Shown: one piece after another, positions 21,651 through 63,747 of the stretch
Layout of the letters: the number at the start of each line of letters is the position of its first letter
How positions within the stretch are numbered: position 1 is the first letter of the stretch
NCBI RefSeq assembly: GCF_039654945.1
Contig: NW_027361676.1
Coordinates: 76,136,001 to 76,200,000, forward strand
Length of the DNA: 64,000 nucleotides
Direction: 5' to 3'
Origin: Dendrobates tinctorius
Lineage: Eukaryota
Made by a program: the position numbers and the translations under genes
Notes under the pieces: model-generated
What the model was told of the DNA's origin: nothing
Database searches by the model: none
Seen by the model: only the letters and a program-made list of their open reading frames with translations

Positions 21651-21961
21651 TAGAGTTGAGTGACTTTGGTCGGATCGGGTTTCATGAAACAAAATTTGAT
21701 TTGGATGAAACTGGTCCGACTAGGGCAAAGAAAGTCGGAGTTTCGTCCGAAACCCGACCCCAATGCAAGTGAATGCGGAATAAAAGTCGGCATTGAGTGG
21801 ATGAATGTCATCCGCTCAATGCCGACTTCTATTTCCCATTGACTTGCATTGGGGTCGGGTTTCAAACGAAATTCCAACTTTTTTTGCCCTAGTCGGACCA
21901 GTTTCATCTGAAACAAATTTTGTTTCATGAAACCCGATCCGACCAAAGTCGTTCAACTCTA
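21651..21961. mobile_element. hAT MITE, near-perfect palindrome
   Basis: TAGAGTTGA TIRs, 8-bp TSD ATTATGAC (21643-21650, 21962-21969). Confidence 0.9.
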
Positions 21962-24572: not shown

Positions 24573-25013
24573 TAATATTGTGTTTATAATTATATTATTT
24601 TTTTCGATTATTTGACTTTAGTGTCTCTCACACATTTTCATGTGCATTCTTCCTTGAATTGAGAAGAATGGATTTAACATGGGCTTGCTATGCACACTTT
24701 GAATAACTGGGATAAATACTGAAGATGGCATATACAGGACTCAACAGGTGCCACTCTGGATCTTCCACAAAATCCCAGCAGAATAAATGTAGCACACAAG
24801 TAGTGGAGATGTTTGAAATTTACAGAGGGCTCTGCTGTGATGGATGGATGCTAATCCTCTAAGTTAATTCCAATAAAATAAGTGCAAAATGTAAAGAAAG
24901 TCAAAGCGAAGGTGCGTAAGATATTCCTGCCTAGCGGCAGAGCTCAGGTGGACTCTACAAATGAAGATATGTCTGTAAGTAGACGCAAATGTCATTCTAC
25001 ACCCAGGGACGCA

Positions 25014-27439: not shown

Positions 27440-27816
27440 TAGCTCCAACCCTAACACAGCCGTAACTTAAACCCTATCCCCAATACACCCCTAACCCTAA
27501 TCCAAACCCTAACCCCAACTCCACCCTAACCCTAACGCCAACACAACCCTAACTCTAGTCCCAACCCTAACCCAAGCCCCAACCCTAACCCAAGCCCCAA
27601 CCCTAACCCCAGCCCAACCCTAACCCTAGGTATAACCCCAACCCTAACCCTAGCCCTAGCCCTGACCCTAAGCCTAGCCTAACCCTAACCCTAGCTCTAA
27701 CCCTTGCCCCAACCCTACCACAACCCTAACCCTAGTTCTAACCTCAATCCTAACACTATCTCTAGCCCAAACCCTAATCCTAGCTTTAGCCCCAACCATA
27801 ACACTAACCCTAACAT
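27440..27816 (+). repeat. Degenerate telomere-like (CCCTAA)n tract
   Basis: Direct reading. Confidence 0.85.
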
Positions 27817-28469: not shown

Positions 28470-28597
28470 NNNNNNNNNNNNNNNNNNNNNNNNNNNNNNN
28501 NNNNNNNNNNNNNNNNNNNNNNNNNNNNNNNNNNNNNNNNNNNNNNNNNNNNNNNNNNNNNNNNNNNNNNNNNNNNNNNNNNNNNNNNNNNNNNNNN
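28470..28597. other. Assembly gap (N run) within GA-rich low-complexity DNA (28330-28695)
   Basis: 128 N. Confidence 1.
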
Positions 28598-29029: not shown

Positions 29030-31300
29030 TCCGTACATCCCGTACTCATATGGCTCCACTCCATACACACACGGTTCCACTCCGTCCACCTTGTACACGC
29101 GTGGCTCCTCTCCGTACACCTCGTACACGCGCGGCTCCGCTCCGTCCACCTCGTACACGCGGCTCCTCTCCGTACACCTCATACACGCGCGGCTCCTCTC
29201 CGTACACCTCATACACGCGCGGCTCCACCTCGTACACACACACGGCTCCTCTCCGTACACCTCGTACACACGCGGCTCCGCTCCGTACACCTCGTACACA
29301 CGCGGCTCCGCTCCGTACACCTCGTACACACGCGGCTCCGCTCCGTACACCTCGTACACGCGGCTCCGCTCCGTACACCTCGTACACGCGGCTCCTCTCC
29401 GTACACCTCGTACGCGCGCGGCTCCTCTCCGTACACCTCGTACACGCGCGGCTCCTCTCCGTACACGCGCCGCTCCTCTCCGTACACCTCGTACACGCGC
29501 GGCTCCGCTCACCTCGTACACGCGCGGCTCCTCTCCGTAAACCTCGTACACGCGCGGCTCCGCTCCGTACACCTCGTACACGCGCGGCTCCTCTCCGTAC
29601 ACCTCGTACACGCGCGGCTCCTCTCCGTACACCTCGTACACGCGCGGCTCCTCTCCGTACACCTCGTACACGCGCGGCTCCTTTCCGTACACCTCGTACA
29701 CGCGCGGCTCCTCTCCGTACACCTCGCACACGCGCGGCTCCTCTCCGTACACCTCGTACACGCGGCTCCGCTCCGTACACCTCGTACACGCGCGGCTCCG
29801 CTCCGTACACCTCGTACACGCGCGGCTCCGCTCCGTACACCTCGTACACGCGCGGCTCCGCTCCGTACACCTCGTACACGCGCGGCTCCGCTCCGTACAC
29901 CTCGTACACGCGCGGCTCCGCTCCGTACACCTCGTACACGCGCGGCTCCGCTCCGTACACCTCGTACACGCGCGGCTCCGCTCCGTACACCTCGTACACG
30001 CGCGGCTCCGCTCCGTACACCTCGTACACGCGCGGCTCCGCTCCGTACACCTCGTACACGCGCGGCTCCGCTCCGTACACCTCGTACACGCGGCTCCTCT
30101 CCGTACACCTCGTACACGCGGCTCCTCTCCGTACACCTCATACACACGCGGCTCCTCTCCGTACACCTCATACACGCGCGGCTCCACCTCGTACACACAC
30201 ACGGCTCCTCTCCGTACACCTCGTACACACGCGGCTCCTCTCCGTACACCTCGTACACACGCGGCTCCTCTCCGTACACCTCGCACACACGCGGCTCCGC
30301 TCCGTACACCTCATACACGCGCGGCTCCACCTCGTACACACACACGGCTCCTCTCCGTACACCTCGTACACACGCGGCTCCTCTCCGTACACCTCGCACA
30401 CACGCGGCTCCGCTCCGTACACCTCGTACGCGCGCGGCTCCGCTCCGTACACCTCGTACGCGCGGCTCCTCTCCGTACACGCGGCTCCGCTCCGTACACC
30501 TCGTACACGTGCGGCTCCGCTCCGTACACCTCGTACACGCGCGGCTCCGCTCCGTACACCTCGTACACGCGCGGCTCCGCTCCGTACACCTCGTACACGC
30601 GCGGCTCCGCTCCGTACACCTCGTACACGCGCGGCTCCGCTCCGTACACCTCGTACACGCGCGGCTCCGCTCCGTACACCTCGTACACGCGCGGCTCCGC
30701 TCCGTACACCTCGTACACGCGCGGCTCCGCTCCGTACACCTCGTACACGCGCGGCTCCTCTCCGTACACCTCGTACACGCGCGGCTCCTCTCCGTACACC
30801 TCGTACACGCGCGGCTCCTCTCCGTACACCTCGTACACACTGCTCCGCTCCGTACACCTCGTACACACTGCTCCGCTCCGTACATGCGTGGCTCTGCTCC
30901 GTACACCTCATACACACGGCTCCGCTCCGTACACCTCGTACACACACGGCTCCTCTCCGTACACCTCGTACACACGGCTCCGCTCCGTACACCTCGTACA
31001 CACATGGCTCCTCTCCGTACACACGGCTCCGCTCCGTACACCTCGTACACACGGCTCCGCTCCGTACACCTCGTACACTCGCGGCTCCGCTCCGTACACG
31101 CGTGGCTCCACTCCGTACACCTCATACACATGGCTCCGCTCCGTACACACACGGCTCCTCTCCGTACACCTCGTACACACGGCTCCGCTCCGTACGCCTC
31201 GTACACACGGCTCCGCTCCGTACACCTCGTACACACTCGGCTCCGCTCCGTACACCTCGTACACACGGCTCTGCTCCGTACATCTCATACACACACAGCT
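29030..31300. repeat. CpG-rich 30-bp minisatellite (CCGTACACCTCGTACACGCGCGGCTCCGCT)
   Basis: Direct reading, with 28- and 30-bp variants. Explains the spurious long ORFs. Confidence 0.97.
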
Positions 31301-33084
31301 CTGCTACATCCACACTGTAAATCTTGACCCCACACATACTTACCTCAACCAGCACCATGACAACAGCAAAGCAGAGTCTTGCAGACGGTAGAGGCAAGGC
31401 TGAGCGCACAGGACCTGTGATGAGGTCACAGGAGGGGCGGAGTCAGGGGTGATATGATCGGGGGTCTGGACAAAGGCTCCTGATCATGTGACCCCCTGAC
31501 TCCTCCCCTCCTGTGACCTCATCACAGCTCCTGCGAACAGAGCGACCAGGCAAGCGAGTGCGACGCTGTGAGTGGCTGCGGGGGTGAGGGGGTCTCATGC
31601 TACGGCGAGGATGGGGTGCGTGGGGGGGCGTGGCGGCTTATCTCCCTGCAGTGCGGGAGGAACTTGAATCTATCACCGCCATGCTGCAGAGGGCCGGCGG
31701 CAGGAGCCACAGTGGCCGCAGCAGCTGGCAAGCGGCCAGATGTTGGGGCTCTGCCGCCCGCGGCCCACGTGACAGCGGTCCAGCGGGAAAATGCCCGGTT
31801 GGTTATATTGCCAATCCGGGCCTGCCTAACACTAATAGAGAAATGGAAAAAAAATATTTTTTATTATTTTTACTTAACTAAGGAGATAATAAAGGGGCAT
31901 TTGCTTTACTATTTTTGCTTTATTATTTTTTATTTTGATCACTGTGATAGGGTCTATCACAGTGATCAATATGATCCAATAAGAGAAACTCCTGTTATTG
32001 CTGGGTGCCGGCCGGCAGAGCTCGGTGGGCACACTGCGCATGTGTCAACCATTTTCTTCCTGGAAAAAGATGCCAAGGGCCGGGGGACAGCCAGAGGGAC
32101 AAGGGGACACCGGAGGTACTGGGGTGCTCGGGTGCTCCCTCGTTTATGAGCCCTGCCATGCGCCCAAACAGTGGCTTTCCTCCACATACGAGGTATCAGC
32201 GTACTCAGGAGAAATTGCACAACAAAGTTATTTTTTGTGAAAATAGTAAAATGTTCTTTTTTCCTTCCACATTGCTTTAGTTCTCGTGAAGCACCTGTAG
32301 GGTTAATAAACTTCCTGAATATGGTTTTGAGTACCTTGAGGGGTGCAGTTTTTAGAATGGTGTCACTTAGGGAAATTTTCTGTCGTATTGACCCCCAAAC
32401 TCACTTCAAATGTGATGTGGTTGCTAAAAAAAATGGTTTTGTAAATTTTGTTGGGAAAATTAGAAATCGCTGGTCTACTTTTAACCCTTATAACATCCTA
32501 AAAAAAAAGTTTCCAAAATTGTGCTGATGTAAAGTATACATGTGGGAAATATTATTTATTAACTATTTTGTGCGATATGACTCTGATTTAAGGGCACAAA
32601 AATTAAAAGTTTGAAAATTGCAAAATTTTCAAAATTGTTACCCAAATTTCCATTTTTTTTTATAAAAGTCATAGCGAAGAAATTTTTATCTCTATGATAA
32701 AGTCCAATATGTTATGAAAAAACAGTCTCAGAATCATTTGTATACATTGAAACATTGCAGTGCTGTAACCTCGTAAAGTGACAGTGGTCAGAATTGTGAA
32801 AATTAGCTTGGTCATCAAGTACCAAATTGGCTCTGTCACTAAGGGGTTAACTTTGAAATGCCTCCAAATAAACCGCTCTGTCTCTTTTAAACCACATACT
32901 TGATTTGTATTGTGAGTGAATAACCAGCAGCACATATTATCCACATTTTCCATTATTTCAATTGTATGTTGCATCTGCCAACCCATGGAGTTGCAATAGT
33001 TGGAACATCTCTTTTTTGAAGCATAAAACTGTACTATCCCACACAGCTATACAAGGTGAGCAGTAATGCTTTCTCTTATACACT

Positions 33085-36000
33085 CAGGGGTGGATTAAGG
33101 GTAGCCAGGGCCCGGGGCAGTTCAGACTCTGTGGGCCCCCCTCGTCACGTGACGGGGGTCATGAATCGTAGAGCCACACTCTACATAGAGAATAATGGAG
33201 CCTCCAGCACCGCCCTCCACCCGCAGAGCCGCACTCCACATAGAGAATAATGGAGCCTCCAGCACCGACCTCCACCCACAGAGCCGCACTCCACATAGAG
33301 AATAATGGAGCCTCCAGCACCGACCTCCACCCGCAGAGCCGCACTCCACATAGAGAATAATGGAGCCTCCAGCACCGACCTCCACCCACAGAGCCGCACT
33401 CCACATAGAGAATAATGGAGCCTCCAGCACCGACCTCCACCCACAGAGCCACACTCTACATAGAGAATAATGGAGCCTCCAGCACCGACCTCCACCCGCA
33501 GAGCCGCACTCCACATAGAGAATAATGGAGCCTCCAGCACCGACCTCCACCCGCAGAGCCGCACTCCACATAGAGAATAATGGAGCCTCCGGCACCGACC
33601 TCCACCCGCAGAGCCGCACTCCACAGAGAATAATGGAGCCTCCGGCACCGACCTCCACCTGCAGAGCCACACTCCACATAGAGAATAATGGAGCCTCCAG
33701 CACCTACCTCCACCCGCAGAGCCGCACTCCACATAGAGAATAATGGAGCCTCCGGCACCGACCTCCACCCGCAGAGCCACACTCCACATAGAGAATAATG
33801 GAGCCTCCGGCACCGACCTCCACCCACAGAGCCACACTCCACATAGAGAATAATGGGGCCTCCAGCACCGACCTCCACCCGCAGAGCCGCACTCCACATA
33901 GAGAATAATGGAGCCTCCAGCACCTACCTCCACCCGCAGAGCCGCACTCCACATAGAGAATAATGGAGCCTCCAGCACCGACCTCCACCCACAGAGCCGC
34001 ACTCCACATAGAGAATAATGGAGCCTCCAGCACCGACCTCCACCCGCAGAGCCATACTCCACATAGAGAATAATGGGGCCTACAGCACCGACCTCCACCC
34101 GCAGAGCCGCACTCCACATAGAGAAAAATGGAGCCTCCAGCACTGACCTCCACCTGCAGAGCCGCACTCCACATAGAGAATAATGGGGCCTCCAGCACCG
34201 ACCTCCACCCGCAGAGCCGCACTCCACATAGAGAATAATGGGGCCTCCAGCACCGACCTCCACCCGCAGAGCCGCACTCCACATAGAGAATAATGGGGCC
34301 TCCAGCACCTACCTCCACCCGCAGAGCCGCACTCCACATAGAGAATAATGGAGCCTCCAGCACCGACCTCCATTCGCAGAGCCGCACTCCACATAGAGAA
34401 TAATGGAGCCTCCAGCACCGACCTCCACCTGCAGAGCCGCACTCCACATAGAGAATAATGGGGCCTCCAGCACCGACCTCCACCCGCAGAGCCGCACTCC
34501 ACATAGAGAATAATGGGGCCTCCAGCACCGACCTCCACCCGCAGAGCCACACTCCACATAGAGAATAATGGGGCCTCCAGCACTGACCTCCACCCGCAGA
34601 GCCGCACTCCACATAGAGAATAATGGGGCCTCCAGCACCGACCTCCACCCGCAGAGCCATACTCCACATAGAGAATAATGGGGCCTCCAGCACCGACCGC
34701 CACCCGCAGAGCCGCACTCCACATAGAGAATAATGGAGCCTCCAGCACCGACCTCCACCCGCAGAGCCATACTCCACATAGAGAATAATGGGGCCTCCAG
34801 CACCGACCTCCACCCGCAGAGCCGCACTCCACATAGAGAATAATGGGGCCTCCAGCACCGACCTCCATTCGCAGAGCCGCACTCCACATAGAGAATAATG
34901 GAGCCTCCAGCACCGACCTCCACCTGCAGAGCCGCACTCCACATAGAGAATAATGGGGCCTCCAGCACCGACCTCCACCCGCAGAGCCGCACTCCACATA
35001 GAGAATAATGGGGCCTCCAGCACCGACCTCCACCCGCAGAGCCACACTCCACATAGAGAATAATGGAGCCTCCAGCACTGACCTCCACCCGCAGAGCCGC
35101 ACTCCACATAGAGAATAATGGGGCCTCCAGCACCGACCTCCACCCGCAGAGCCATACTCCACATAGAGAATAATGGGGCCTCCAGCACCGACCGCCACCC
35201 GCAGAGCCGCACTCCACATAGAGAATAATGGAGCCTCCAGCACCGACCTCCACCCGCAGAGCCATACTCCACATAGAGAATAATGGGGCCTCCAGCACCG
35301 ACCTCCACCCGCAGAGCCGCACTCCACATAGAGAATAATGGGGCCTCCAGCACCGACCTCCACCCGCAGAGCCGCACTCCACATAGAGAATAATGGGGCC
35401 TCCAGCACCGACCTCCACCCGCAGAGCCACACTCCACATAGAGAATAATGGAGCCTCCAGCACCGACCTCCACCCGCAGAGCCGCACTCCACATAGAGAA
35501 TAATGGGGCCTCCAGCACCTACCTCCACCCGCAGAGCCGCACTCCACATAGAGAATAATGGAGCCTCCAGCACCGACCTCCATTCGCAGAGCCGCACTCC
35601 ACATAGAGAATAATGGAGCCTCCAGCACTGACCTCCACCTGCAGAGCCGCACTCCACATAGAGAATAATGGGGCCTCCAGCACCGACCTCCACCCGCAGA
35701 GCCGCACTCCACATAGAGAATAATGGAGCCTCCAGCACTGACCTCCACCTGCACAGCCGCACTCCACATAGAGAATAATGGGGCCTCAAGCACCGACCTC
35801 CACCCGCAGAGACGCACTCCACATAGAGAATAATGGGGCCTCCAGCACCGACCTCCACCCGCAGAGCCGCACTCCACATAGAGAATAATGGAGCCTCCAG
35901 CACCGACCTCCATTCGCAGAGCCGCACTCCACATAGAGAATAATGGAGCCTCCAGCACTGACCTCCACCTGCAGAGCCGCACTCCACATAGAGAATAATG

Positions 36001-37811
36001 GGGCCTCCAGCACCGACCTCCACCCGCAGAGCCGCACTCCACATAGAGAATAATGGAGCCTCCAGCACTGACCTCCACCTGCACAGCCGCACTCCACATA
36101 GAGAATAATGGGGCCTCAAGCACCGACCTCCACCCGCAGAGACGCACTCCACATAGAGAATAATGGGGCCTCCAGCACCGACCTCCACCTGCAGAGCCCC
36201 ACTCCACATAGAGAATAATGGAGCCTCCAGCACCGACCTCCACCCGCAGAGCCGCACTCCACATAGAGAATAATAGAGCCTCCAGCACCGACCTCCACCC
36301 GCAGAGCCGCACTCCACATAGAGAATAATGGAGCCTCCAGCACCGACCTCCACCCGCAGAGCCGCACTGCACATAGAGAATAATGGAGCCTCCAGCACCG
36401 ACCTCCACCCGCAGAGCCGCACTCCACATAGAGAATAATGGAGCCTCCAGCACCGACCTCCACCCGCAGAGCCGCACTCCACATAGAGAATAATGGGGCC
36501 TCCAGCACCGACCTCCACCCGCAGAGCCGCACTCCACATAGAGAATAATGGGGCCTCCAGCACCGACCTCCACCCGCAGAGCCGCACTCCACATAGAGAA
36601 TAATGGAGCCTCCAGCACTGACCTCCACCCGCAGAGCCGCACTCCACATAGAGAATAATGGAGCCTCCGGCACCGACCTCCACCCACAGAGCCGCATTCC
36701 ACATAGAGAATAATGGAGCCTCCAGCACCGACCTCCACCCGCAGAGCCGCACTCCACATAGAGAATAATGGAGCCTCCAGCACCGACCTCCACCCGCAGA
36801 GCCGCACTCCACATAGAGAATAATGGGGCCTCCAGCACCGACCTCCACCCGCAGAGCCGCACTCCACATAGAGAATAATGGAGCCTCCAGCACCGACCTC
36901 CACCCGCAGAGCCGCACTCCACATAGAGAATAATGGGGCCTCCAGCACCGACCTCCACCCGCAGAGCCGCACTCCACATAGAGAATAATGGAGCCTCCAG
37001 CACCGACCTCCACCCGCAGAGCCGCACTCCACATAGAGAATAATGGGGCCTCCAGCACCGACCTCCACCCGCAGAGCCGCACTCCACATAGAGAATAATG
37101 GGGCCTCCAGCACCGACCTCCACCCGCAGAGCCGCACTCCACATAGAGAATAATGGAGCCTCCAGCACTGACCTCCACCCGCAGAGCCGCACTCCACATA
37201 GAGAATAATGGAGCCTCCGGCACCGACCTCCACCCGCAGAGCCGCATTCCACATAGAGAATAATGGAGCCTCCAGCACCGACCTCCACCCGCACTCCACA
37301 TAGAGAATAATGGAGCCTCCAGCACTGACCTCCACCCGCAGAGCCACACTCCAAATACATGGCTGCTCTCAGTGCTCTGTGCTGTGCGCACAGGACCTGT
37401 GATGAGGTCACAGGAGGGGAGGAGACAGGGGTCACATGATCGGGGGCCCTGACACCTTCCCTCCTGTGATCTCATCACAAGCCTTTGCACGCTACCAGCA
37501 GCATCAGCGTTCACGCTACTTATAGATGCTGCTGGTAGCAGAGCACATAATGCCTCCCCCACGGTCACTCACTTTTAGGTGGGGAGAAGATGGAGTGCCA
37601 TTGCAGCAGCCAGCAGGAATGTGGTGGGGGCCCCCTTAGAAGCTCTTGTGGTGGGGGCCCCGGGGCTGAAGTCCCGCCTGCCCTGCCTTTAATCCGGCCC
37701 TGCGCGGTGGCAGATTATAATGGGGCAATTTACTGGCCTGGGCTGTGGGCCCCTTAACCCCACTGGGCCCGGGGCAACTGCCCAAATTGACCTCATTATA
37801 ATCCGCCACTG
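33085..37811. mobile_element. Composite non-autonomous hAT element carrying a 4.2-kb minisatellite
   Basis: Left TIR CAGGGGTGGATTA, inner right TIR ending 37702, mini-element 37705-37811. 8-bp TSD TATACACT (33077-33084, 37812-37819). Confidence 0.85.
33170..37352. repeat. 55-bp minisatellite, ~76 copies
   Basis: Unit ACATAGAGAATAATGG(A/G)GCCTCCAGCACCGACCTCCACCCGCAGAGCCGCACTCC. Confidence 0.98.
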
Positions 37812-38167
37812 TATACACTGGTATATTGGATAAAACTGTATTGCACTTAATTTATCCCTACAGCCTATCCATCTGTTGGTCTTTATTTTTATGCTTCTGC
37901 ACAACCTGTTAATCAAACTGTATGCAAGCATAACAGAGGGTACGGCAAGATATTGGACAGGGGCAATAAGAACACTGTTGCTTAGTAAAGGAGAGGACAT
38001 TCCAATACCTATAGTGCTTGTAGAATCCTAATAAACAGAAACCACACACACAAAAAAAGTGGACGGAAAACTAAAGCATGAGAATAAAGACATAGACTCA
38101 TACGTTCAACAATAACAATTTAAGTTGGTTGTTGTGAAGAACATTCCTCCGCTTCAGCCTCATGGTA

Positions 38168-38590
38168 TCAATTCTTATGGAAATAATTTATGGACTTCCA
38201 TGCGCTGCTTGACAAAATACAGGATCCCAATTAAGGTGAAAGATTAATCATTTATTCCCAATGCGTTTCGAAGTAACGTTTCGAAGATGTCTGTCATCCC
38301 CTGAGGAAGAAGTAACCTTTCCTTCGAAACGCGTTGGGAATAAATGATTAATCTTTCACCTTAATTGGGATCCTGTATTTTGTCAAGCAGCGCATGGAAG
38401 TCCATAAATTATTTCCATAAGAATTGATGTTTTGGCGATCACTTGGTTTGACCTTAGGATTCCTAGTCAGCTGCTGCACGTCCAATGTGCTTGATCTCCC
38501 CTGCAAACAGGTGAGTGAATTTCTTTTACTTTTTTGATATTAACCAGGATAAGACCCTATTGCGCTTTTCTGTTCCTTTAGTATATTGCA
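38168..38590 (+). mobile_element. Penelope pseudo-LTR with inverted 5' arm, nested in the b3gat3 palindrome
   Basis: 15-bp TSD TTCAGCCTCATGGTA (38153-38167, 38591-38605). 38168-38272 is the inverse of 38322-38427. Hammerhead motif. Putative 71-nt intron 38511-38581 (CAG|GTGAGT...TTCCTTTAG). Confidence 0.85.
38297..38339 (+). ncRNA. Minimal type I hammerhead ribozyme motif with palindromic stem III
   Basis: TCCC-CTGAGGA-A-GAAG(N9)CTTC-GAAA-CGCGT-T-GGGA. Predicted cleavage after 38335 (GUU). Confidence 0.7.
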
Positions 38591-38803
38591 TTCAGCCTCA
38601 TGGTAGAAAGAAGAAAGCAGACTTGAACATACTATTCGTGCTGTTATCAAAGCCAGGGCTGAACGCGACAAGCTGAGCGTCCACCGAGCTCCATCATTCG
38701 CCGGGGAGTGATGGAGCTCGGTGGACGCTCAGCTTGTCGCGTTCAGCCCTGGCTTTGATGACACCATGAATAATATGTTCCCGTCTGATTTCTTCTTTCT
38801 ACC

Positions 38804-38908
38804 ATGAGGCTGAAGCTGAGGAACGTCTTTCTGGTGTATTTTGTGGTGTCCAGCACCGGTCTCCTGTATGCATTACTGCAGCTCGGTCAGCAATGTGACG
38901 TCAGATAA
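38804..38908 (+). pseudogene. b3gat3: GlcAT-I (B3GAT3) N-terminal cytoplasmic tail and transmembrane segment, truncated by a stop
   Basis: ACCATG context. Translation [34 protein letters not shown] versus human B3GAT3 [32 protein letters not shown] (recognised from memory). Confidence 0.85.
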
Positions 38909-39987
38909 ACCCTGGCAATAACATTCACAGGAGGGAAGCCCCGCGCCACCGTGGTGGGGAAAACATGCTCTGGTTGTTGTGAAGGAAACAAGACCTTGGA
39001 TTTACTCTAAAAAAGGGGTGAAATGGCAGATACGATTCTGTGGTAATGGGTTAAATCATAGAATCCCATCAATAAGTTGCCAGAAAGTAACTCACATAAA
39101 CTAAATATACTTAACCCCCTAACTCCCAACACTGGATTTTAACTGTTATTAAATATACATAGTTCAAGGAGAATGTGCAATGACGCATGATGGAGTCACT
39201 TGATCCTCACAACAACCTTGGTGTAGGAAATAGGGATTAAGAAGCACATGATGATTTTAATTATATTCAGGCAGACAGAAAGAAGATCAAAAAGAAGAAA
39301 CAGAATAAGTCAAATATGAGAGTTCAAAGGATCCCAAGGAAGTATTATCTGAAGTAATCTACTTTTGAGTTCAGATTCATACACATTTAATTGTTGGGAT
39401 GCACATATTCTTGTGGAAAGATATCTTGCAATTAAACTTTAGTCCTCAGGCATCACTTTTACAGATTGCTATCTTGTAATGATTTTGTTTCATAATTCAA
39501 TAGTGCAAGTGAAGATTTGCATTATAGCTTATTAAGAAAACCCCTACATCTATGCTTTTCACATATATTTACTTCCCCCAAGTTTATGCACTGAACGCAC
39601 TCTTTGAAATATAGGATGAAATCCAAATACCAAAGTCGATACACAGATAAATGAGATTAACGTCTGCAACCCATAAAAGTTATGTGGAGGGAAAGAAGAA
39701 AGAGGGATGAGCTGCTAGAGTGAGACACAGGCCAAGAGACAAAGATAAGGCGCTGCTGCTTCTAGGGAACATATAATGTAAATTAGTGCTGGATTCACAG
39801 ATACATGGCAAAATACTGCTGTAAAATGTCCACCATACTGGGTGCTGCTAAAGTGAGAGAGAAGCACAGAGACACAGATATGATGCTGCCACTTTTAGGG
39901 AGCTTATAACACAAATCAGAGCCTAGTTTCACAGCTCCATGGCTTAATACTGTTGTATAATGTCTACCATATCAGTTGGTTGTGTAA

Positions 39988-40643
39988 AGGCCCCGTCTCA
40001 CTAAGCGACTTACCAGCGATCCCGACACCGATATCAAGGTGTCAGGATCGCTAGTAAGTCGCTATGTGATCGCTGGTGAGCTGTCACACAGCTTCACCAG
40101 CGATCAGCACAGCGATGCCGAACGCCCGGCATCGCTGGCCATCCTGTAAAAAATAGAATCAAAATAAAAAATATTGTTATTCTCACCTTCCGATGTCCCG
40201 CGCAGTCTTCCGGCCTCTCTCCACGCTCCGGTCCCAGTGATCCTTTGCACGAATGACCGCGAGATGTCACGGTCTCGCGGGATAACAAAGTCTCGCAGTC
40301 ATTCATGCAAAGGATCACTGGGACCGGAGCGTGGAGAGAGGCCGGAAGACTGCGCGGGACATCGGATGGTGAGAATAACAATATTTTTTATTTTTTTTAT
40401 TATTTTTTACACCTGATCGCTGGTCTCCCGCTGTCACACACAGCGATGTGTGCTGGCCAGCGGGAGACCAGCGACAAAAGAAATGTCCAGAGATTTCTTG
40501 CAGCGATCAGCGATACCGGCAGGGGGGCCGCTCACTGATCGCTGTCACACACAGCAATCTCGCTGGTGAGATCGCTGTTGTGTCACAAAAGTTGTGACTC
40601 AGCAGCGATCTCGCTACCGAGATTGCTTAGTGAGACGGGGCCT
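39988..40643. mobile_element. Harbinger-type MITE with internal palindrome (40170-40385)
   Basis: AGGCCCCGTCTCACTAAGC TIRs flanked by TAA/TTA, subterminal AGCGA repeats. Confidence 0.8.
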
Positions 40644-41660
40644 TTAGAGTGAGACTGAGACAAAGAGACAAAGATAAGGTGCTGCTGCTTCTACACTCCC
40701 TGACAGAAGTTATGTCGCTTATCCATGTTATGTAAATAAAAGCTTATAACCTGACGTTAAATTCATCCTTTGGTTGTATAAATTACTCTTTTGAAAGCTG
40801 AAACCCTCTGAAATGTTGTTTAGGTTAAGAAAATAAATTGGCATCAGTGCCGAAATATTGATCATTTACTGAACACAGAATGGTCAGATTTTGGTAAGAC
40901 AAAAGTTTTGTCGCCCACAGAAAGTATTGTGATATTTAAACAAACAATTAACTGAAAATACAAATATGTGTTGCAGAACATTGGTGAATGAAGTTGTGGT
41001 GCTATTAGAGTCATATTTAATATTTTGTGTGACTTCCATGAGCTTGAAGGACTGCATCCATGTGGTTCAACAATGATTCATACAATTTATTAATGAAGTC
41101 ATCAGGAATAGCAAAGAATGCAGTCTTACATGCCTCCCAGAGTTCATCTAGATTCTTTGGTTTTGTCTTCCAAGCTTCCTCTTTCATCCTACCCCAAACG
41201 TGCTCAATGATGTTCATGTCTGGTGACTGGGCTGGTCAGTCCTTGAGCACCTTGATCTGTTTTGCCTAGAGGAACTTTGCTGTAGAGATGGATGTATGAG
41301 TTGGAGCACCATCCTGCTGCAGAATTTGACCCCATTTATGATTTGGAAAATAAGAGGTAGCTAATACTTCTTGATATTTTAGTCTATTGATATTGCCTTC
41401 CACCTTGCAAATGTTTTGCACACCCCCATGCTGAATGTAACCCCAGTCCATGATCTTTCCACCACCAAATTTAACAGTTTTCTGGGTGTATTTTGGATCC
41501 ATACGGGCTCCAGTAGGTCTCCTGCAGGAGGCTGTGGTGTTGTTAGGTGTCAGGTTTCTGCGTCTGCTCTGCAGGAATCCAGAGCCTCACATTCTGCGGT
41601 CTCCTGCTGTCCTTCTACTGCAGAGGAGATTACTTTGCAGCAGACCACTCCAGAGACTAA

Positions 41661-42556
41661 AGGGCATGTCACACTAAGAGATATCACTAGCAATATCGCT
41701 ATAACTAGTGACGTTATAGCGATATTGCTAGTGATATCGCAGTGTCTGATACTTACCTACGACCGGCTCCCCCGCTGGTTATCGCTAATCGCGCGAGAAC
41801 GTCCTGGACCGTTTCTCGTCGTCAGCTTCCTGCTGCGCTTCCTGTGGAGAGACGAGCGACGCGTGGAGCCGGGTGGGAGGACGTAGGATCGCTTAGTGTG
41901 ACAGGTAAGTAGCGACCCCCGTCCCCAGCGATGTCGCTAGTGAGATCTGCCTGTGTGGCAGCTCACTAGCGACCATTTAGCGATGTACCAGCAATCCTGA
42001 CCGCGTCATATCGCTGGTCGGGATCGCTGATACATCGCTAAGGCTGGTTTCACATTAGCGCTTTTTAAGCGCACGCACGGCCGGGGGTAGCTCCGCCCCC
42101 GAGCCGGCTCTCTGCCCGGCGTGCCCGCCCCTTGCTTGTAGCGCCGCCTCCTAGCGCACAGCGGCCCCTGCGATCGGCGCACCCTATCTTTAGCATAGGG
42201 TGCGCAGATCGTGCGCAGGCCGTGCGCTAGTTGCGCTTTGACCTGCGCTGCGCACTTTTGACGGTGCGCCGTGCGCGCCAAAATCCGAAAAGTTTGATTT
42301 TGGCGTGCACGGCGCACCGTCAAAAGTGCGCAGCGCAGGTCAAAGCGCAACTAGCGCACAGCCTGCGCACGATCTGCACACCCTATGCTAAAGATAGGGT
42401 GCGCCGATCGCAGGGGCCGCTGTGCGCTAGGAGGCGGCGCTACAAGCAAGGGGCGGGCACGCCGGGCAGAGAGCCGGCTCGGGGGCGGAGATACCCCCGG
42501 CCGTGCGTGCGCTTAAAAAGCGCTAATGTGAAACCAGCCTAAGTGTGACAGTACCT
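41661..42556. mobile_element. Harbinger-type MITE inserted in the solo LTR
   Basis: AGGGCATGTCACAC / GTGTGACAGTACCT TIRs, TSD TAA. An equivalent empty site (GATTAAGTCC) is seen in the 52787 LTR. Confidence 0.8.
42042..42539. mobile_element. Young palindromic Harbinger-type MITE nested in the previous MITE
   Basis: GGCTGGTTTCACA TIRs, TSD TAA (42039-42041, 42540-42542), ~240-bp nearly perfect arms. Confidence 0.9.
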
Positions 42557-47416: not shown

Positions 47417-48660
47417 TAGTGATGAGCGATACCACCCAATATTGAAAAATAACGGATCGGATTGGATTGGCCGATATCCAAAAAGTATCGGGTATCGCCG
47501 ATTCCGATCCTGGAAGTCCCATTCAAGTCAATGGGACAGAAATATCGGAATGAAAAAACCCCTTTCTTTACTTGCACATCCAGTTCGGGAGGGGGGAAGA
47601 GTGTGGGCGGTGTGTGGGCGGACACTGTGCGTGTCTGTGTGTGCGGGCGGGGTCTGTGCGGGCCTGCCCGGGGCTTCTGCCGGCTGCCAGGGGTCTGTAC
47701 GGGCCTGCCGGGGGGCTTGTGCTGGCTGCTGGGGGTCTGTACGGACCTGCCGGGGGCTTGTGCCGGCTGCCGGGGATCTGTACGGGTCTGCCGGGGGCCT
47801 GTGCCGGCTGCCGGGGGTCTGTACGGGCCTGCCGGGGGCTTGTGCCGGCTGCCGGGGGTCTGTACGGGCCTGCCGGAGGCCTGTGCTGGCTGCCGGGGGT
47901 CTGTACGGGCCTGCCGAGGGCTTGTGCCGGATGCCGGGGTCTGTAAAGGCCTGCCGGGGGCTTGTGCCGGCTGACGGGGGTCTGTACGGGCCTGCCAGGG
48001 GCTTGTGCCGGCTGCCGGGGGTCTGTGCGGGCCAGCTGGGGGTCTTGTGTGTGTGCAGGCATCGTCCGATGGGACTACAAGTCCCATCGGGCGATGCCTG
48101 CTACAATGACAGTGATGGACACATTAGCTAATGATGGGACAGTAGTAGTCCCATCATCCGGCTAATGTGTTGAATGAAAAAAAAAAAAAAAACATACATA
48201 CTACATACATACTACATACATACATATATACAACATTCATACAACATACATACATATATACTACATTCATACAACATGCATACATAGTACATACATACTA
48301 CATACATACAACATACATACAACATGCTACATTCATACAACATACATACTACATACATACTACATACAACATACATACATTCATACAATACATACTACAT
48401 TCATAGGCACAGGCCCCCGGCAGGCCCGTACAGGCCTCCCACAGTCGGCACAGACCGCACATCATGATGCGCACAGACCGCGCATCATGATGACATAATT
48501 TCAGCAGCCAATCACAGCCACAACAGTGGCTCATTGCATTATGGGGACTTCCGATTCCGGTATCCGATATTGAAAAAATATCGGTACTCGGTATTGGAAT
48601 TCCGATACAGCAAATATCGTCCGATACCCGATATTTGCAGTATCGGAATGCTCAACACTA
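47417..48660. mobile_element. hAT non-autonomous element with 41-bp GC-rich minisatellite and (TACA)n-like tract, inserted in L1
   Basis: TAGTGATGAGC/GCTCAACACTA TIRs, 8-bp TSD ATGCTAAA. Confidence 0.9.
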
Positions 48661-49344
48661 ATGCTAAATGATCAAAGGGCAGAATCCCCGAGCTCCCCAT
48701 CAAGTCCTGAAGGTTCCTAATCCCCGCCGTTATCCAGACTTGCAAGTCTATATATGGAATGTGTGCCTCAAGGGCTCTCAGAGACACGTTACTTAAGTGG
48801 ATTTTAATTAAGGATGTGGCTAAGTTCCTCCTATGCTGTAATGCGGCTACCATTGTTGGCAAACCTGGTGTATACCGGCTAATCTTAATAGCCTCAGCTT
48901 CCAATACTAGGCAATGAGAGTTCCTTTTAGCATAGAATATTTCAATTTGAAGCCATCTGTAGTCCCTGTCCATATACCACCAGTCCGAGTCCAGTTAGCA
49001 CAGATGCTCTGTGGTATGCTATGAGATTCGGCATGCCCATCCCTCCAAGATCATATAATAATAATATAATAGGCTACTTGCTATCCTTGGCTGCTTATGT
49101 GCCCAGATATAATGATTGGCCATTCGTTGAAGCATCAGGATAATCCTATTAGGGATTTTAAAAGGGATGCGCCTAAAGAAATAGATAATTTTGGGATGTA
49201 TTATCATTTTAAAGATATTGATCCTCGCTATCCATGAGGTCATAATATTATGAAGTTTATCTAACTCTGATTTAATAGTTTTAGCTAGTTTAGAGAAGTT
49301 ATTATCCACTACATTTTGGGAGCTTGTTAGTGTAATTCCTAAGT

Positions 49345-49839
49345 CAATCAAATCAATCAAATCAAATTTATTATCGCCAAGTACATATTACATATATACA
49401 AGGAATTCTTTGTGGCAAAGAGGCAACATAATATATAACAACAGATACAACAAGTAACATCTAACAAGACATATACAGTATATAGTCTACACATGATGAT
49501 TTAATTGTTGAACAGAGAGTGGATAGAAGCTGTTCATATGGCGGTTGGTGCTGCATTTGGGGACTCTGAAGCGACGTCCTGAAGGGAGTAGTTGGAATGA
49601 GGAGTGTCCCGGGTGAGAGGGATCAGATGAAATTTTCAATGCGTGGGATCGAATACTCTTATCATAAAGATCCTGGATTTTAGGCAGGGGGGAACCTATA
49701 ATTCTCTCTGCTGTTCTGAAAGTCCTTTGTAAGCGGAGTTTGTCATGTGCAGTGGCTCCCCCATACCAGACTATCAGAGAGGAACAAATCACAGATCTGA
49801 TGACAGCATTAAAGAATAAGATCAGCAGATTCTTATGGT
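49345..49839 (-). mobile_element. Rex1/Babar LINE 3' fragment inserted in L1 RT
   Basis: VWYGGATAHDKLRLQR...DPSHPGHSSFQLLPSGRRFR...NSFYP, (TTGA)n tail, TSD TAAGT (49340-49344, 49840-49844). Confidence 0.9.
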
Positions 49840-52426
49840 TAAGTATGGGATACCGTCCAGCATCCACTTAAAGGGGAATCTATTCTCGAAAGATCTGTGT
49901 AGTGCATCTGGGACTGCAACTGGATAGATCAAGGATTTCATAGGGTTTAGTTTGTAATATGATATTTTACCAAATTCCTCCAGCACGGACATGACAGCTG
50001 AGAACGATGGCCCAATATTCACACATGAGATTATGACGTGGTCCGCATAAAGTCCCACTTTATGTGTTACTGGGCCCACTGTGATCCCAGAGATATTGTA
50101 ATCTGATCTTATGCGCTCAGGTAACGGTTTCATACATAGTTCAAATATGAAAGGGGGCAGCCTTGTCGTGTTCCGTTTGTTATTCGGAAGATTCCAGACA
50201 TGAAACCCAATGACAGTACCCTAGCACAGGGAGTCGAATACATAGAACTAATTGCTGAGAAAATGGGACCCACAAAGCCAAATTTAGTCAAGACAACCCG
50301 AAAATATCCCCAGTGCACCCTGTCAAACGCTTTTTCAGCATCCAGTGACAGGAATGCAGTGGGGACACCAGAAAGCTCCGCCACCCTTATCAAATCCAGC
50401 ATTCTCCTTGTACCATCTTTTGCTTCACATACAGCCACGAACCCTACTAGGTCCGGAGAGATCAGTGATGGAATAATCAATTTCAAATGTGACGCTAGAA
50501 TCTTTGTGAATAGCTTGACATCACAGTTCAAAAATGCTGTAGGTCTAAAATTGCCTGGGACCGTGGGGGACTTCCCCGGTTTAGGAAGGGTAGTGATCGT
50601 AGCCTCCAACCCGGGTGTAGACACTTTGCCCGTTTCTCTCCATGCTGTAAATAGACGTAATAGAAAGGGAATCAAATCTTGTTGAAAACATCGGTAATAG
50701 ACATTTGAGAATCCATCCGGACCAGGGGCCCAATATCGTTTAGTATAGTTTATAGAGAATTGAACTTCTTCCTCAGTGAAAGGGGCATTCAAAAGCGTTA
50801 ATTGGTCTGGGGAAATATGGGGTAAATTAATTGATTGGAGATATTTGTCTATCTCTTGTTGATCAGGTTGCGGAGTAGATGTACTTTTAAATTATAAAGA
50901 TGGGTATAGTATTTGGAAAATACTTCTACGATTTCATTCGGAGTTCTAACAAACCGTCCCTCAGAATCCACTAAATATTCGACTCTAGATTTCACTTCCC
51001 TATGACGAACTCTACGAGCTAGCAGGGCACCCGCCCTATCACCTGTGGCATATAATTTAGTTCTAAATTTCTTTAGATTATGGGCATATATAGACAGGAA
51101 AGTTTCACGTACTTTAAATCTAATCTGGAAAATTTATTTTGAAACAGCAAGAGAAGGATTAGACTTATTTGTGGACTCTAAATTGTATAAACCGGATATA
51201 AGGTCATTTCTGCTTTTTTCCCTTTTACTTTTTAAAAAGGACGCCTGTTGTAGTAAAATTCCTCTAACACTGCTTTATGAGCGGCCCATAGAGTCTCATC
51301 AGTGATCACTTTGGAATCATTTATCTGGAAATATTGCTTCAGCTCAGATTTAACCTTTGCAACTACCCCATCATTCAGTAATAACAACTCATTTAACCAC
51401 CACCTGAAGGCAGAGCTAGCCTGATGAGAGAGTGCTAGTTGTAAAGAAATAGGCGCATGGTCAGACCATGTGATTAGGCCTATGCCTGCAGATATATACC
51501 TCCGGAGGACAGCACTGTCTCTCAAGAAATGATCTATCCTGCTATATGTACGATGTCGGAAGGAATAGAATGTATAGTCCCTTTCCCTCGCATGGGAGTA
51601 TCTCCAGAAATCGTGATAGTGATATTCATGTGCTAGCAATCTTAGCTCCCTCCGATTTCGCCTTTTTCCTTGTGAACAATCCAGAATTCTATCCATAGGG
51701 AGATTAAAATCCCCACATACTATTTTCCTCCCTTGTTACAATTTGGAGACTTTTTTTAAATCTTTTTTTTTACTTTTGGCATGCTTCAATAGCCTCCATG
51801 AGAGACTAAAAGCTGCCACAACCCAATTGGCTCTGCTCCATAGAGGCGATGATCAAATTTGCCTCTATATAGCAGAATTACTCACTTGCTACGAGCTGGG
51901 TGTCCGGTGCTCACAGCAAGCCAGCACTGACAACCATAGGGATCTCCAGGAGACCTCTGGTTGCCATGCCAACGAACCAGTGACCAGTGATCATGTTACG
52001 GGGGTCACCAGTGGGCAGATTTTCGGCCCAATGGCTGGAAGCGCGAGTTAAATGCGTTTGACAGCAACATTTAACAGGCTTATAGCAGCAGATGGATTCC
52101 ACCCACAGCTATTACGGGCACATGTCAGCAGTTCAAAACAGCTGACATGTCCCGGGAGAGAAGTGGGCTCACCGCCGGAGCCCACATCAAACGGAGTCAG
52201 ACAGCGGAGTAAATTTACGCCCAATGTCAGAAAGGGGTTAACAATGTTGCAACATTTAACTTTTACAGGCTCTTTTCACATTGCTGGCTGAGCTAATCAA
52301 AAAATTTACAGCTCATTCTGAAGAGTTCAATTTCATATGTCCATTATTTATGGTTAGTGCCCAAATCACAATATCTGGATTGATTATCACAACTCCTGAC
52401 CTGAACTAAAGTTGAGCAGAACTTAA

Positions 52427-63456: not shown

Positions 63457-63747
63457 TAATGATTAAAAAAAAAAAAAAAAGCAGCACAAAATTACAATAG
63501 GGTGCAAAAGCCTTCCAGGCATGTACCAAACCTGTATAATAGATCCAAAAATGATGAAGGCAGCACACCAATAGATGAAATTTCACTTGCAGTTTATTGG
63601 CCCATGTGCAACGTTTCTGTCCCAAGTGTGGACCTTTCTTAAGACCTTTATCTGCTTGGGAACTTGGGACTGTAACATTGCACATGGTCCAATAAACTAC
63701 ACATGAAATTTCTTCTATTGGTGTGCTGCCTTCATCATTTTTTGGAT
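63457..63747 (-). mobile_element. Fold-back Penelope-like pseudo-LTR fragment with degenerate hammerhead-like motif
   Basis: TSD CTAG(A/C)TAAAATGTGG (63442-63456, 63748-63762). Arms ~63540-63627 and 63661-63750. Minus strand CTTAAGA-AAG-GTCC..GGAC-A-GAAACGTTG. ACCCTATTG motif shared with 38168-38590. Confidence 0.65.

What the first reader, a model, noticed from the sequence alone, without database searches (positions are those of the whole stretch)
38140..38970. Fold-back retrocopy of a host mRNA 5' end (b3gat3): candidate Penelope-driven gene capture
Seen: an insertion bounded by a 14-bp TSD with no poly(A). It holds ~100 nt of 5'UTR plus ATG...LLQLGQQCD, folded as a spacer-less palindrome about the mRNA 5' end (38702/38703). 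Established: the peptide matches the B3GAT3 N-terminus. As I recall, human exon 1 ends at c.82 (LG|QPCD), so read-through implies a spliced template. L1 retrocopies normally keep the 3' end and poly(A), and twin-priming inversions do not duplicate sequence. Inference: an RT primed internally on a cellular mRNA, ran to the 5' end, and the cDNA snapped back. This is the same architecture and TSD length as the pseudo-LTR insertions nearby, suggesting trans-retroposition of mRNAs by Penelope-like machinery to give hairpin pseudogenes.
Basis: partly seen in the sequence, partly recalled or inferred. Interest (0 to 1): 0.9.

Follow-up and report, generated by a model that had tools for sequence, protein, structure and literature searches.

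The report
Fold-back b3gat3 mRNA retrocopy, nested repeat
A frog genome holds a dead, hairpin-shaped copy of the first ~270 bases of the spliced b3gat3 messenger RNA. It went in with a 14-base target duplication and no poly(A) tail, and a second hairpin-shaped repeat later landed inside it. It is a real and unusual retrocopy, but nothing yet ties it to Penelope enzymes.

Summary
The core observation holds. An exact 14-bp direct repeat (38126-38139 / 38971-38984) bounds an insert with no poly(A). The insert contains a spacer-less palindrome (axis 38702/38703) and an ORF matching B3GAT3 N-termini.

A 423-bp high-copy fold-back repeat (38168-38590) with its own exact 15-bp duplication sits inside the left arm. 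A related species lacks it, which gives an empty site. Without it, the primary insert is 393 bp: a 125-nt inverted arm, a 125-nt direct arm and a 143-nt tail.

RNA-like contigs of the same species match 38703-38968 at about 95%. They restore the frame with 7 nt that this copy has lost. DNA contigs of the parent break at 38774/5 and 38885/6, so the template was spliced at two introns.

Those RNA contigs run 48 nt beyond the axis, so "RT ran to the mRNA 5' end" is not supported.

No Penelope sequence, hammerhead or RT lies in the insert or the window. The link rests only on shared architecture: four other fold-back + tail + 13-15-bp-duplication inserts in this window, unrelated in sequence. An APE-type LINE is a live rival.

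The same scan noted another 3'-truncated, poly(A)-less retrocopy (INTS2) elsewhere in this genome.

The parts
38126..38139 (.). Left copy of the 14-bp target-site duplication TGGTTGTTGTGAAG of the primary insertion. Its last 3 nt (AAG) also fit the continuation of the arm, which suggests 3 nt of junction microhomology.
   Evidence: (D3, I3)
38140..38167 (-). Outer 28 nt of the left (inverted) arm. It is antisense to the b3gat3 start codon region and reads MRLKRRNV on the minus strand. The last 15 nt double as the left duplication of the nested insert.
38168..38590 (+). Nested secondary insertion: a 423-bp high-copy fold-back repeat. Arms are 38168-38281 and 38314-38428 (97% complementary), the loop is 32 nt, and the tail is 162 nt (38429-38590). 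The tail has a short ORF and an intron-like gtgagt...tttag segment. An exact 15-bp duplication TTCAGCCTCATGGTA flanks it (38153-38167 / 38591-38605). It is absent from the orthologous contig of a related species.
   Evidence: D2, I1; depth in the thousands in X1 and X8; X8 record 25 joins 38152 to 38591 with 15 shared letters
38591..38605 (.). Right copy of the 15-bp duplication of the nested insert. It is also part of the left arm of the b3gat3 palindrome.
   Evidence: (D2)
38606..38702 (-). Inner 97 nt of the left (inverted) arm, antisense to the b3gat3 5'UTR. Together with 38140-38167 it forms a 125-nt arm that aligns without gaps to the reverse complement of 38703-38827, with 12 mismatches.
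38703..38827 (+). Right (direct) arm in b3gat3 mRNA sense. It holds 5'UTR (38703-38803, with the parent's exon junction at 38774/38775) and the start codon at 38804. The palindrome axis is at 38702/38703.
38828..38970 (+). Unpaired 143-nt tail, a continuation of the b3gat3 coding sequence. The conserved exon junction lies at 38885/38886 (QLG|Q). A 7-nt deletion after 38897 creates the stop at 38906-38908. Similarity to the parent mRNA runs to 38968, and the last 2 nt (TC) are unassigned. There is no poly(A).
   Evidence: (X5 record 23, X10 record 12; the ACTGTAC insertion in the parent and in organism B)
38971..38984 (.). Right copy of the 14-bp target-site duplication.
   Evidence: D3; X1 record 5 spans the junction with no differences

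Best explanation
This is a dead, single-event, fold-back retrocopy of the 5' part of the spliced b3gat3 mRNA. That part is about 273 nt and starts 49 nt into the assembled transcript.

Shown:
- The template lacked two introns.
- The copy ends inside the coding region with no poly(A).
- One 14-bp target duplication encloses a 125-nt inverted arm, a 125-nt direct arm and a 143-nt tail.
- The insertion predates the split from a related species.
- In this species' lineage a 423-bp high-copy fold-back repeat later inserted into the left arm with a 15-bp duplication, and a 7-nt deletion closed the frame.

Inferred mechanism:
1. A target-primed reverse transcriptase nicked the bottom strand at the left edge of TGGTTGTTGTGAAG.
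2. It began cDNA synthesis at an internal site of the mRNA.
3. It copied up to a point 48 nt short of the transcript's assembled 5' end. That point could be an RT stop or a downstream start site.
4. The 3' end of the nascent cDNA turned back and used the cDNA itself as template for 125 nt.
5. The end was joined to the upstream target end through 3 nt of microhomology (AAG).

Inferred enzyme: most likely the same enzyme that makes the other fold-back + one-sided tail + 13-15-bp-duplication inserts in this window, one of which is nested in this copy. The published description of Penelope-like insertions fits that shape. No Penelope sequence is present here, so this last step is the weakest.
For: Anatomy:
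- Searches give the TSD, the arms and the axis.
- One search shows the TSD is not chance.

Parent and splicing:
- RNA-like contigs X5 record 23 (1312 nt) and X10 record 12 (1332 nt) match 38703-38968 contiguously. They show 13 substitutions plus a 7-nt ACTGTAC that restores ...QQCDCTRQINPG....
- DNA contigs carrying the parent's letters have a split at 38774/38775 (X1 and X8).
- They also end or start within about 3 nt of 38885/38886 (X1).

Conserved intron: 14 of the 18 short exon-1 fragments fetched, from fish, sauropsid-like and mammal-like sequences, read ...QLG followed by E (intron GTGAG).

Identity.

Age and nesting:
- X8 record 25 of a second species carries the left flank, both arms and the tail to 38968.
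- It lacks exactly 38153-38590.
- It still has the 7 nt.

Recurrent architecture:
- 23603-24572: 14-bp exact TSD, 97-nt tail.
- 41905-42538: 13 bp with 1 mismatch, 133-nt tail.
- 63457-63747: 15 bp with 1 mismatch, 90-nt tail.
- 38168-38590: 15 bp exact, 162-nt tail.

Literature:
- PLE insertions often carry an adjacent inverted partial copy and a one-sided tail (PMC8557442).
- A PLE RT initiates internally on its RNA, at a site without homology to the target, and extends both target strands in vitro (PMC11167929).
- PLEs have moved host genes in trans (PMC3846280).
Against: - No pLTR, hammerhead, RT or GIY-YIG sequence lies in the insert. No hammerhead was found in the window or in the other fold-backs tested. 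ORF inspection found no PLE-like RT or GIY-YIG ORF.
- The five fold-back inserts share no sequence, so none is demonstrably Penelope-derived.
- The published PLE host-gene captures kept their introns and were framed by pLTRs (PMC3846280). This copy is spliced and has no pLTR.
- In vitro, the anole PLE needs part of its own ORF RNA as template (PMC11167929).
- An APE-type LINE with RT is in the same window. L1 TPRT can give 3'-truncated, non-polyadenylated insertions and hairpin-primed inverted duplications (bioRxiv 10.1101/2024.12.14.628481).
- A truly spacer-less axis is awkward for a simple hairpin, which needs a loop.
- The right junction could not be cross-checked. The second species' contig departs from the window after 38968, and 38969-39347 was not found in that run.
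- An earlier follow-up on a similar INTS2 retrocopy in this genome found no link to Penelope.
Confidence: 0.6

Rival explanations
1. The retrocopy anatomy is the same, but an APE-type LINE (L1/L2-like) reverse transcriptase made it. TPRT would have started at an internal mRNA site, or the 3' part and poly(A) were lost. The free cDNA or DSB end then self-annealed and primed an inverted duplication before ligation.
For: - A LINE with Exo_endo_phos and RVT_1 ORFs lies at about 48.5-52 kb of this window.
- A 14-bp TSD is within the usual L1 range (established knowledge).
- bioRxiv 10.1101/2024.12.14.628481 reports L1-induced inverted duplications from hairpin self-annealing and 3'-truncated non-polyadenylated TPRT insertions.
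- L1-type elements are the established source of spliced processed pseudogenes.
Against: - There is no poly(A) or A-rich 3' end.
- Classical twin priming inverts without duplicating, whereas here 125 nt are present twice.
- The inverted duplications in that L1 study concern genomic DNA at the break, not the cDNA itself.
- The same fold-back + tail + long-TSD shape recurs five times in 64 kb with unrelated sequences, none with a poly(A) end except possibly the T-run end of 63457-63747. This points to a machinery for which fold-back is the rule.
Confidence: 0.22
2. The hairpin is a functional locus: an inverted-repeat source of double-stranded or small RNA against b3gat3, kept by selection.
For: - The 125-nt arms are antisense and sense to the b3gat3 5'UTR and start codon.
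- The copy is retained in two species.
- The inner 51 nt of the arms have no mismatch (P about 0.016 for such a run).
Against: - In the two RNA-like runs, every listed diagnostic site shows only the parent's letters, so no contig carries the copy's own letters.
- The arms differ at 12 of 125 positions. The left arm has been split by a 423-bp insertion in this species without apparent cost.
- No promoter or small-RNA data exist.
- Retention in two species about 4% apart is what neutral DNA does.
Confidence: 0.05
3. It is the real b3gat3 first exon, or a DNA-level segmental duplication of it, and the 14-bp repeat is a coincidence.
For: The ORF starts with a good ATG and matches B3GAT3 N-termini.
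Against: - The window holds no further B3GAT3 exons.
- The frame is broken by a 7-nt deletion relative to the transcript.
- The copy is colinear with RNA contigs across two places where the parent's DNA contigs break.
- The intron after QLG is conserved across vertebrates.
- Chance for the TSD is about 2e-7 at the observed positions.
Confidence: 0.02
4. The palindromes are assembly artefacts, such as fold-back chimeric long reads.
For: Spacer-less palindromes are a known long-read artefact (established knowledge). Short-read contig depth is low over the axis in X1.
Against: - The arms differ at 9.6% of positions, so they are not a read folded on itself.
- Independent contigs span both outer junctions in X1 with no differences.
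- A contig of a second species spans the axis and both arms.
Confidence: 0.01

Closest known systems
Processed pseudogenes (retrocopies) made by LINE-1-type TPRT, including 5'-inverted ones from twin priming
   Same: It is an RNA-templated copy of a spliced host mRNA. It is flanked by a target-site duplication of L1-like length (14 bp), is dead on arrival or soon after, and has part of the sequence inverted at the 5' side.
   Different: It has no poly(A) and ends inside the coding region, keeping the 5' end rather than the 3' end. The inverted part duplicates the adjacent 125 nt instead of being the next upstream segment, so the product is a palindrome.
Penelope-like element insertions (inverted 5'-truncated copy next to the unit, one-sided 'tail', TSD; PMC8557442) and PLE RT internal initiation (PMC11167929)
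   Same: It has the head-to-head inverted partial copy, an unpaired extension on one side only, a TSD around the whole unit and no poly(A). Initiation was inside the RNA rather than at its 3' end. One fold-back insert of the same shape is nested in it.
   Different: It holds no pLTR, hammerhead, RT or GIY-YIG sequence. The template is a cellular mRNA. The published tail is 30-40 bp and element-specific, whereas here the tail is 143 nt of coding sequence. The axis is at the inner (5') ends, while the outer ends differ.
Penelope-mediated trans-mobilisation of host genes in Adineta vaga (PMC3846280)
   Same: A host gene sequence was copied to a new site with a TSD, ascribed to a retroelement's enzymes acting in trans.
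   Different: Those copies keep all introns and are framed by two direct pLTRs and one inverted pLTR. This one is spliced, partial (5' 273 nt) and carries no element sequence at all.
Self-primed hairpin cDNA (snap-back second-strand synthesis by retroviral RTs in vitro; established knowledge) and hairpin-primed inverted duplications at L1-induced breaks (bioRxiv 10.1101/2024.12.14.628481)
   Same: A 3' DNA end folds back on itself and is extended. This gives an inverted duplication whose axis marks where first-strand synthesis stopped.
   Different: Here the product was integrated in the germline as a complete insertion with a TSD. No loop is left at the axis.

Membership tests
Processed pseudogene / retrocopy of a host mRNA | Lacks the parent gene's introns | tested here: met
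   RNA-like contigs are colinear with 38703-38968. DNA contigs with the parent's letters split at 38774/5 and break at about 38885/6. The intron after QLG is conserved in 14 of the 18 short exon-1 fragments fetched from other vertebrates.
Processed pseudogene / retrocopy of a host mRNA | Flanked by a target-site duplication | tested here: met
   An exact 14-bp repeat lies at the insert's two ends. Chance is about 2e-7 at those positions.
Processed pseudogene / retrocopy of a host mRNA | 3' poly(A) tail | tested here: not met
   The insert ends ...GGGGAAAACATGCTC inside the coding region, and there is no T-run at the other end.
Processed pseudogene / retrocopy of a host mRNA | A separate, expressed parent gene exists | tested here: met
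   1.3-kb contigs at depth about 30 occur in two small RNA-like runs, and separate parent-type contigs occur in DNA runs. The window holds no other B3GAT3 exons. The parent sequence itself could not be fetched.
Penelope-like element insertion or PLE-mobilised sequence | PLE cis or coding sequence (pLTR with hammerhead, RT, GIY-YIG) in or around the insert | tested here: not met
   Rfam gives no hammerhead at gathering score in the window, nor at E<=1 or E<=0.1 in the fold-backs tested. The stop-to-stop ORF list showed no PLE-like RT or GIY-YIG by inspection, and only eight ORFs were scanned with Pfam. There is no similarity to the other fold-back inserts.
Penelope-like element insertion or PLE-mobilised sequence | Adjacent inverted partial copy, one-sided tail, and one TSD around the unit | tested here: met
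   The structure is a 125-nt inverted arm, a 125-nt direct arm, a 143-nt tail and a 14-bp TSD. The same shape occurs in four other inserts of the window. The match is in shape only.
Penelope-like element insertion or PLE-mobilised sequence | AT-rich target / ATT cleavage preference (PMC11167929) | tested here: inconclusive
   The five target sites listed show no common motif, and there are too few sites.
L1 twin-priming 5' inversion | The inverted segment is the upstream continuation of the direct segment, with no duplication | tested here: not met
   Both arms copy the same 125 nt.
B3GAT3 / glycosyltransferase family 43 gene | Glyco_transf_43 catalytic domain | tested here: not met
   Only residues 1-32 of five vertebrate B3GAT3 proteins align, at 38804-38899 and nowhere else in the window. 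About 24 further stem-region codons follow in another frame after the 7-nt deletion.

The most novel reading that the evidence does not exclude
In this frog a Penelope-type (or other non-LINE-1) reverse transcriptase retroposes ordinary cellular mRNAs in trans, with no element sequence attached. It initiates inside the RNA and snaps back at the end of first-strand synthesis. The result would be a class of 5'-retaining, poly(A)-less 'hairpin pseudogenes'. The INTS2 copy noted elsewhere in this genome would be a second member.
Probability: 0.3. Interest if true: 0.75.

Novelty: new variant of a known kind. Interest (0 to 1): 0.5.

Why it matters
Processed pseudogenes are almost always read as the work of LINE-1-type enzymes, which start at the poly(A) tail and keep the 3' end of the mRNA. 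A spliced copy that keeps the 5' end, lacks poly(A) and is folded back on itself shows a different way for a cellular mRNA to enter the germline.

It sits among unrelated inserts of the same shape. If the enzyme is Penelope-like, this would be the first case of such an element copying a host mRNA that carries none of the element's own sequence. It would also give natural products against which the in vitro findings of internal initiation can be tested.

The nested insert has a clean empty site in a sister species. That gives a dated series: old fold-back, then speciation, then young fold-back. The series shows the process has been active for a long time.

As it stands, this is one dead fragment with no sign of function.

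Tried and rejected
1. Fetching the frog parent b3gat3 sequence failed.
- The 34-aa ORF is too short for the search for homologous proteins.
- A 58-aa read-through with XX at the break found no candidate.
- Full-length searches with a salmonid fragment and the Pleurodeles protein listed 120 hits each, with no anuran among the named hits. No listed N-terminus matched the frog sequence.
- The exact-ORF look-up found nothing on record.
- As a result, three things could not be read: the 48 nt upstream of the axis, the bases after 38968, and the intron sequences.

2. Hammerheads were not found.
- Rfam found none.
- A CTGAGGA...GAAAC string in the loop of the nested repeat (about 38297-38322) was checked by hand. 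It fails because stem I cannot pair, so it was rejected.
- The microRNA 'hits' are far below gathering scores and merely reflect hairpins.

3. Pfam on ORFs of the other fold-backs gave nothing, so there is no sign that they derive from host coding sequences.

4. A common target motif for the five inserts was not found.

5. The idea that the arms came from two differently spliced templates was rejected, because they align without gaps across the 38774/5 junction.

6. Earlier-findings look-ups by sequence and by four words were blank.

7. One fragment among the protein hits (P0002) looks mammalian and close to the human protein. It was only displayed and not used further.
Full report
**What is in the sequence**

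The stretch 38140-38970 is bounded by an exact 14-bp direct repeat, TGGTTGTTGTGAAG (38126-38139 and 38971-38984). The left copy ends where the inverted arm begins. The right copy starts 2 nt after the last base that matches the parent transcript. A match at such fixed positions has a chance of about 2e-7, and only 1.7% of random 2.2-kb sequences of this composition hold any exact 14-mer repeat. Neither end has an A- or T-run.

The insert holds two separate inverted repeats, not one:
- 38167-38281 / 38314-38428, with a 32-nt loop.
- 38591-38702 / 38703-38814, with no spacer.

A 32-nt stretch at the far left (38136-38167) is the reverse complement of 38800-38831. A 15-bp direct repeat, TTCAGCCTCATGGTA, occurs at 38153-38167 and 38591-38605.

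**The insert is composite**

These pieces fit one reading. A 423-bp fold-back repeat (38168-38590) has inserted into the left arm of the b3gat3 palindrome and duplicated 15 bp of it. Three results support this.

1. When 38168-38605 is removed, 38140-38167 plus 38606-38702 aligns without a gap to the reverse complement of 38703-38827. That is 125 nt with 12 mismatches.
2. Public contigs laid on the region show the nested piece at depths in the thousands in the DNA runs of two species. The flanks and the b3gat3 part sit at single-copy depth, about 7-10.
3. A 1294-nt contig of a second species (X8 record 25) carries the left flank, the left duplication and 38140-38152. It then passes directly to 38591-38968, with 15 letters fitting either side of the joint. 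That is a precise empty site for the nested element. A graph built from 31-letter words cannot jump across a 15-bp repeat, so this is not an assembly slip.

The primary insert is therefore 393 bp: a 125-nt inverted arm, a 125-nt direct arm and a 143-nt tail.

**Identity of the copied sequence**

The ORF at 38804-38905 was searched against 1.84 billion representative proteins. It gave 32 hits at E<=1e-3, the best at 2e-7, each aligning at or near an N-terminal Met. The longer hits that were scanned, except two, carry Glyco_transf_43. Their sources name this protein family galactosylgalactosylxylosylprotein 3-beta-glucuronosyltransferase 3. tblastn of five vertebrate B3GAT3 proteins against the window finds residues 1-32 at 38804-38899 (E about 1e-10) and nothing else. 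The real gene is therefore not here.

**The parent and the splicing state**

Two small runs of the same organism, from different studies, each hold a 1.3-kb contig at depth about 30 (X5 record 23, X10 record 12). The runs are 62 and 114 million letters. That is too little to assemble single-copy DNA of a frog genome, so the contigs are taken as RNA.

Both contigs match 38703-38968 contiguously, with 13 substitutions and one 7-nt insertion (ACTGTAC) behind 38897. With those 7 nt the frame continues ...[30 protein letters not shown]. That is the stem region of the enzyme, loosely alignable to shark and other sequences seen. The copy therefore covers about 273 nt of mRNA and is broken by a 7-nt deletion.

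In the DNA runs, contigs that carry the parent's letters behave differently:
- One in each species is split at 38774/38775.
- In X1 the parent-type pieces end about 16 nt after 38872 and begin about 39 nt before 38923. Both fall within about 3 nt of 38885/38886.
- Parent-specific words would run 30 nt past each variant if the DNA were colinear. These breaks therefore mean divergence, which points to introns.

It is independently supported. Of the 18 short exon-1 fragments fetched from other vertebrates, 14 read ...QLG followed by E and unrelated residues. That is what a phase-1 intron starting GTGAG gives. The template was spliced at two introns.

I could not fetch the parent sequence itself. 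The intron evidence therefore rests on the laid contigs and on conservation.

**The axis is not the assembled 5' end**

Both RNA-like contigs have 48 more nucleotides on the 5' side of the base that aligns with 38703. RNA-seq contigs seldom overshoot a start site. The transcript's 5' end in those tissues therefore lies at least 48 nt upstream of the axis. The template may have come from a downstream start site, or the enzyme may have stopped early. The statement that it "ran to the 5' end" is not supported.

**Age and order of events**

- The second species differs from the window by about 4% in the left flank (14 of 341) and in the copy (15 of 378).
- The two arms differ by 9.6%, and the direct arm plus tail differs from the parent by 4.9%. 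These figures fit an insertion about twice as old as the species split.
- The arms of the nested repeat differ by 3% and the element is missing in the sister species, so it came after the split.
- The 7-nt deletion and the changes at 38767 and 38923 are also specific to this species' copy.
- The four listed coding differences shared by both species' copies against the parent (38842, 38860, 38869, 38872) are all synonymous third positions by my reading of the frame. This suggests the parent gene changed under selection while the copy kept the older state.

**Mechanism**

The mRNA-sense 3' end abuts the right duplication. This is the geometry of target-primed reverse transcription from a bottom-strand nick at the left edge of the duplicated 14 bp. 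The copy ends inside the coding region and has no poly(A). Synthesis therefore began at an internal site, or on a truncated RNA.

The two arms share their inner end and differ in their outer ends. That is what a turn-back of the growing cDNA onto itself produces. The outer end of the inverted arm meets the target with 3 nt (AAG) that fit both, as in microhomology-mediated joining. These steps are inferred.

A dual-strand priming model, suggested by the anole PLE cutting and extending both strands (PMC11167929), would need both cDNAs to stop at the same base. That in turn needs a real RNA end at the axis, which the 48-nt overhang does not favour.

**Which enzyme**

The window holds four other fold-back inserts with a one-sided tail of 90-162 nt and a 13-15-bp duplication:
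- 38168-38590
- 23603-24572, with 430-nt arms, 100% identical
- 41905-42538
- 63457-63747

They share no sequence with each other or with the b3gat3 copy. The shape matches published descriptions of Penelope-like insertions (PMC8557442), and internal initiation is a documented property of a PLE RT (PMC11167929).

Nothing here is demonstrably Penelope, however:
- There is no hammerhead.
- No PLE-like RT or GIY-YIG ORF was recognised among the window's ORFs.
- The only published host-gene captures by PLEs kept their introns and pLTRs (PMC3846280).

The window does hold an APE-type LINE. L1 TPRT is reported to give hairpin-primed inverted duplications and poly(A)-less 3'-truncated insertions. I therefore give the Penelope attribution less than even odds on its own, and the LINE rival about 0.2.

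**Earlier notes of this scan (AI notes, unchecked by me unless stated)**

- The same stretch was also noted as a possible dsRNA source with inner arms more alike than outer arms (s1-386175). I confirm the pattern: there is no mismatch in 38709-38759, P about 0.016. I found no copy-specific transcript.
- A follow-up elsewhere in this genome described an INTS2 retrocopy that is also spliced, 5'-retaining and without poly(A). It found no link to Penelope (s1-386051). The scan has thus met this kind of product before on other DNA.
- Several first-reader notes list fold-back, tail and 14-16-bp duplications with hammerheads in other windows. I checked only this window's examples.

**Verdict**

This is a real, unusual but dead retrocopy, more complex than first described.
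- The splicing inference and the one-event fold-back insertion are supported.
- The "5' end" claim is not supported.
- The Penelope claim remains a hypothesis.

Noticed in passing
window 38168-38590: A high-copy 423-bp fold-back repeat (depth in the thousands in two species) with an exact 15-bp TSD and a clean empty site in the sister species. Its 162-nt tail holds a 28-codon ORF (MFWRSLGL...CKQ) followed by an intron-like gtgagt...tttag segment of about 72 nt. That segment is retained in an RNA-like contig. Its family is unknown and it has no Rfam hammerhead.
   Followed up: partly
window 23589-24586: A very young fold-back insert: 430-nt arms that are 100% identical, a 16-nt spacer, a 97-nt tail on the left, and an exact 14-bp TSD TAATATTGTGTTTA. 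No Pfam or Rfam match.
   Followed up: partly
window 41892-42551 and 63442-63762: Two more fold-back + tail inserts with candidate TSDs of 13 and 15 bp (one mismatch each). The second ends in a T-run on the oriented strand. Further fold-backs without a clear TSD lie at 21646-21966 and 18985-19196.
   Followed up: partly
window 39925-40400: An extremely abundant repeat (summed contig depth 1e5-5e5 in two species; also present in RNA-like runs) containing a 117-nt-arm fold-back at 40148-40407.
   Followed up: no
window 38969-39347: The right flank, including the right TSD copy, was not found in the sister species' run. Its contig continues for 461 nt of unlike sequence after 38968, and another contig resumes at 39348. 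This may be a deletion/insertion there or a longer copy. It is unresolved.
   Followed up: no
window 38617-38645 (mirror of 38760-38788): Seven of the 12 arm mismatches cluster in 29 nt that straddle the exon junction, and most are changes in the left arm. They lie 12-40 nt from the nested insertion. P about 0.1 for such a cluster, so this may be chance.
   Followed up: partly
window 27489-27814, 28470-28597, 29064-31305, 33170-37357: An interstitial (CCCTAA)n tract of about 55 units lies next to an assembly gap (N run). It is followed by a 30-bp-unit satellite of about 2.2 kb and a 55-bp-unit satellite of 76 copies at 95% identity, which ends about 800 bp before the insert.
   Followed up: no
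window about 48500-52000 (minus strand) and about 41000-41600: A LINE remnant with Exo_endo_phos (51235-51735) and RVT_1 (50133-50891) ORFs. A Tc1/mariner-like transposase remnant is judged by eye from ...PAQSPDMNIIEHVWG....
   Followed up: partly
protein searches: No anuran B3GAT3 appears among the named hits in the 120 best matches to a salamander B3GAT3, although coelacanth, lizards, sharks and teleosts do (62-80% identity). The frog stem region read here ([26 protein letters not shown]) is also unusual. Frog b3gat3 may be fast-evolving or poorly represented.
   Followed up: no
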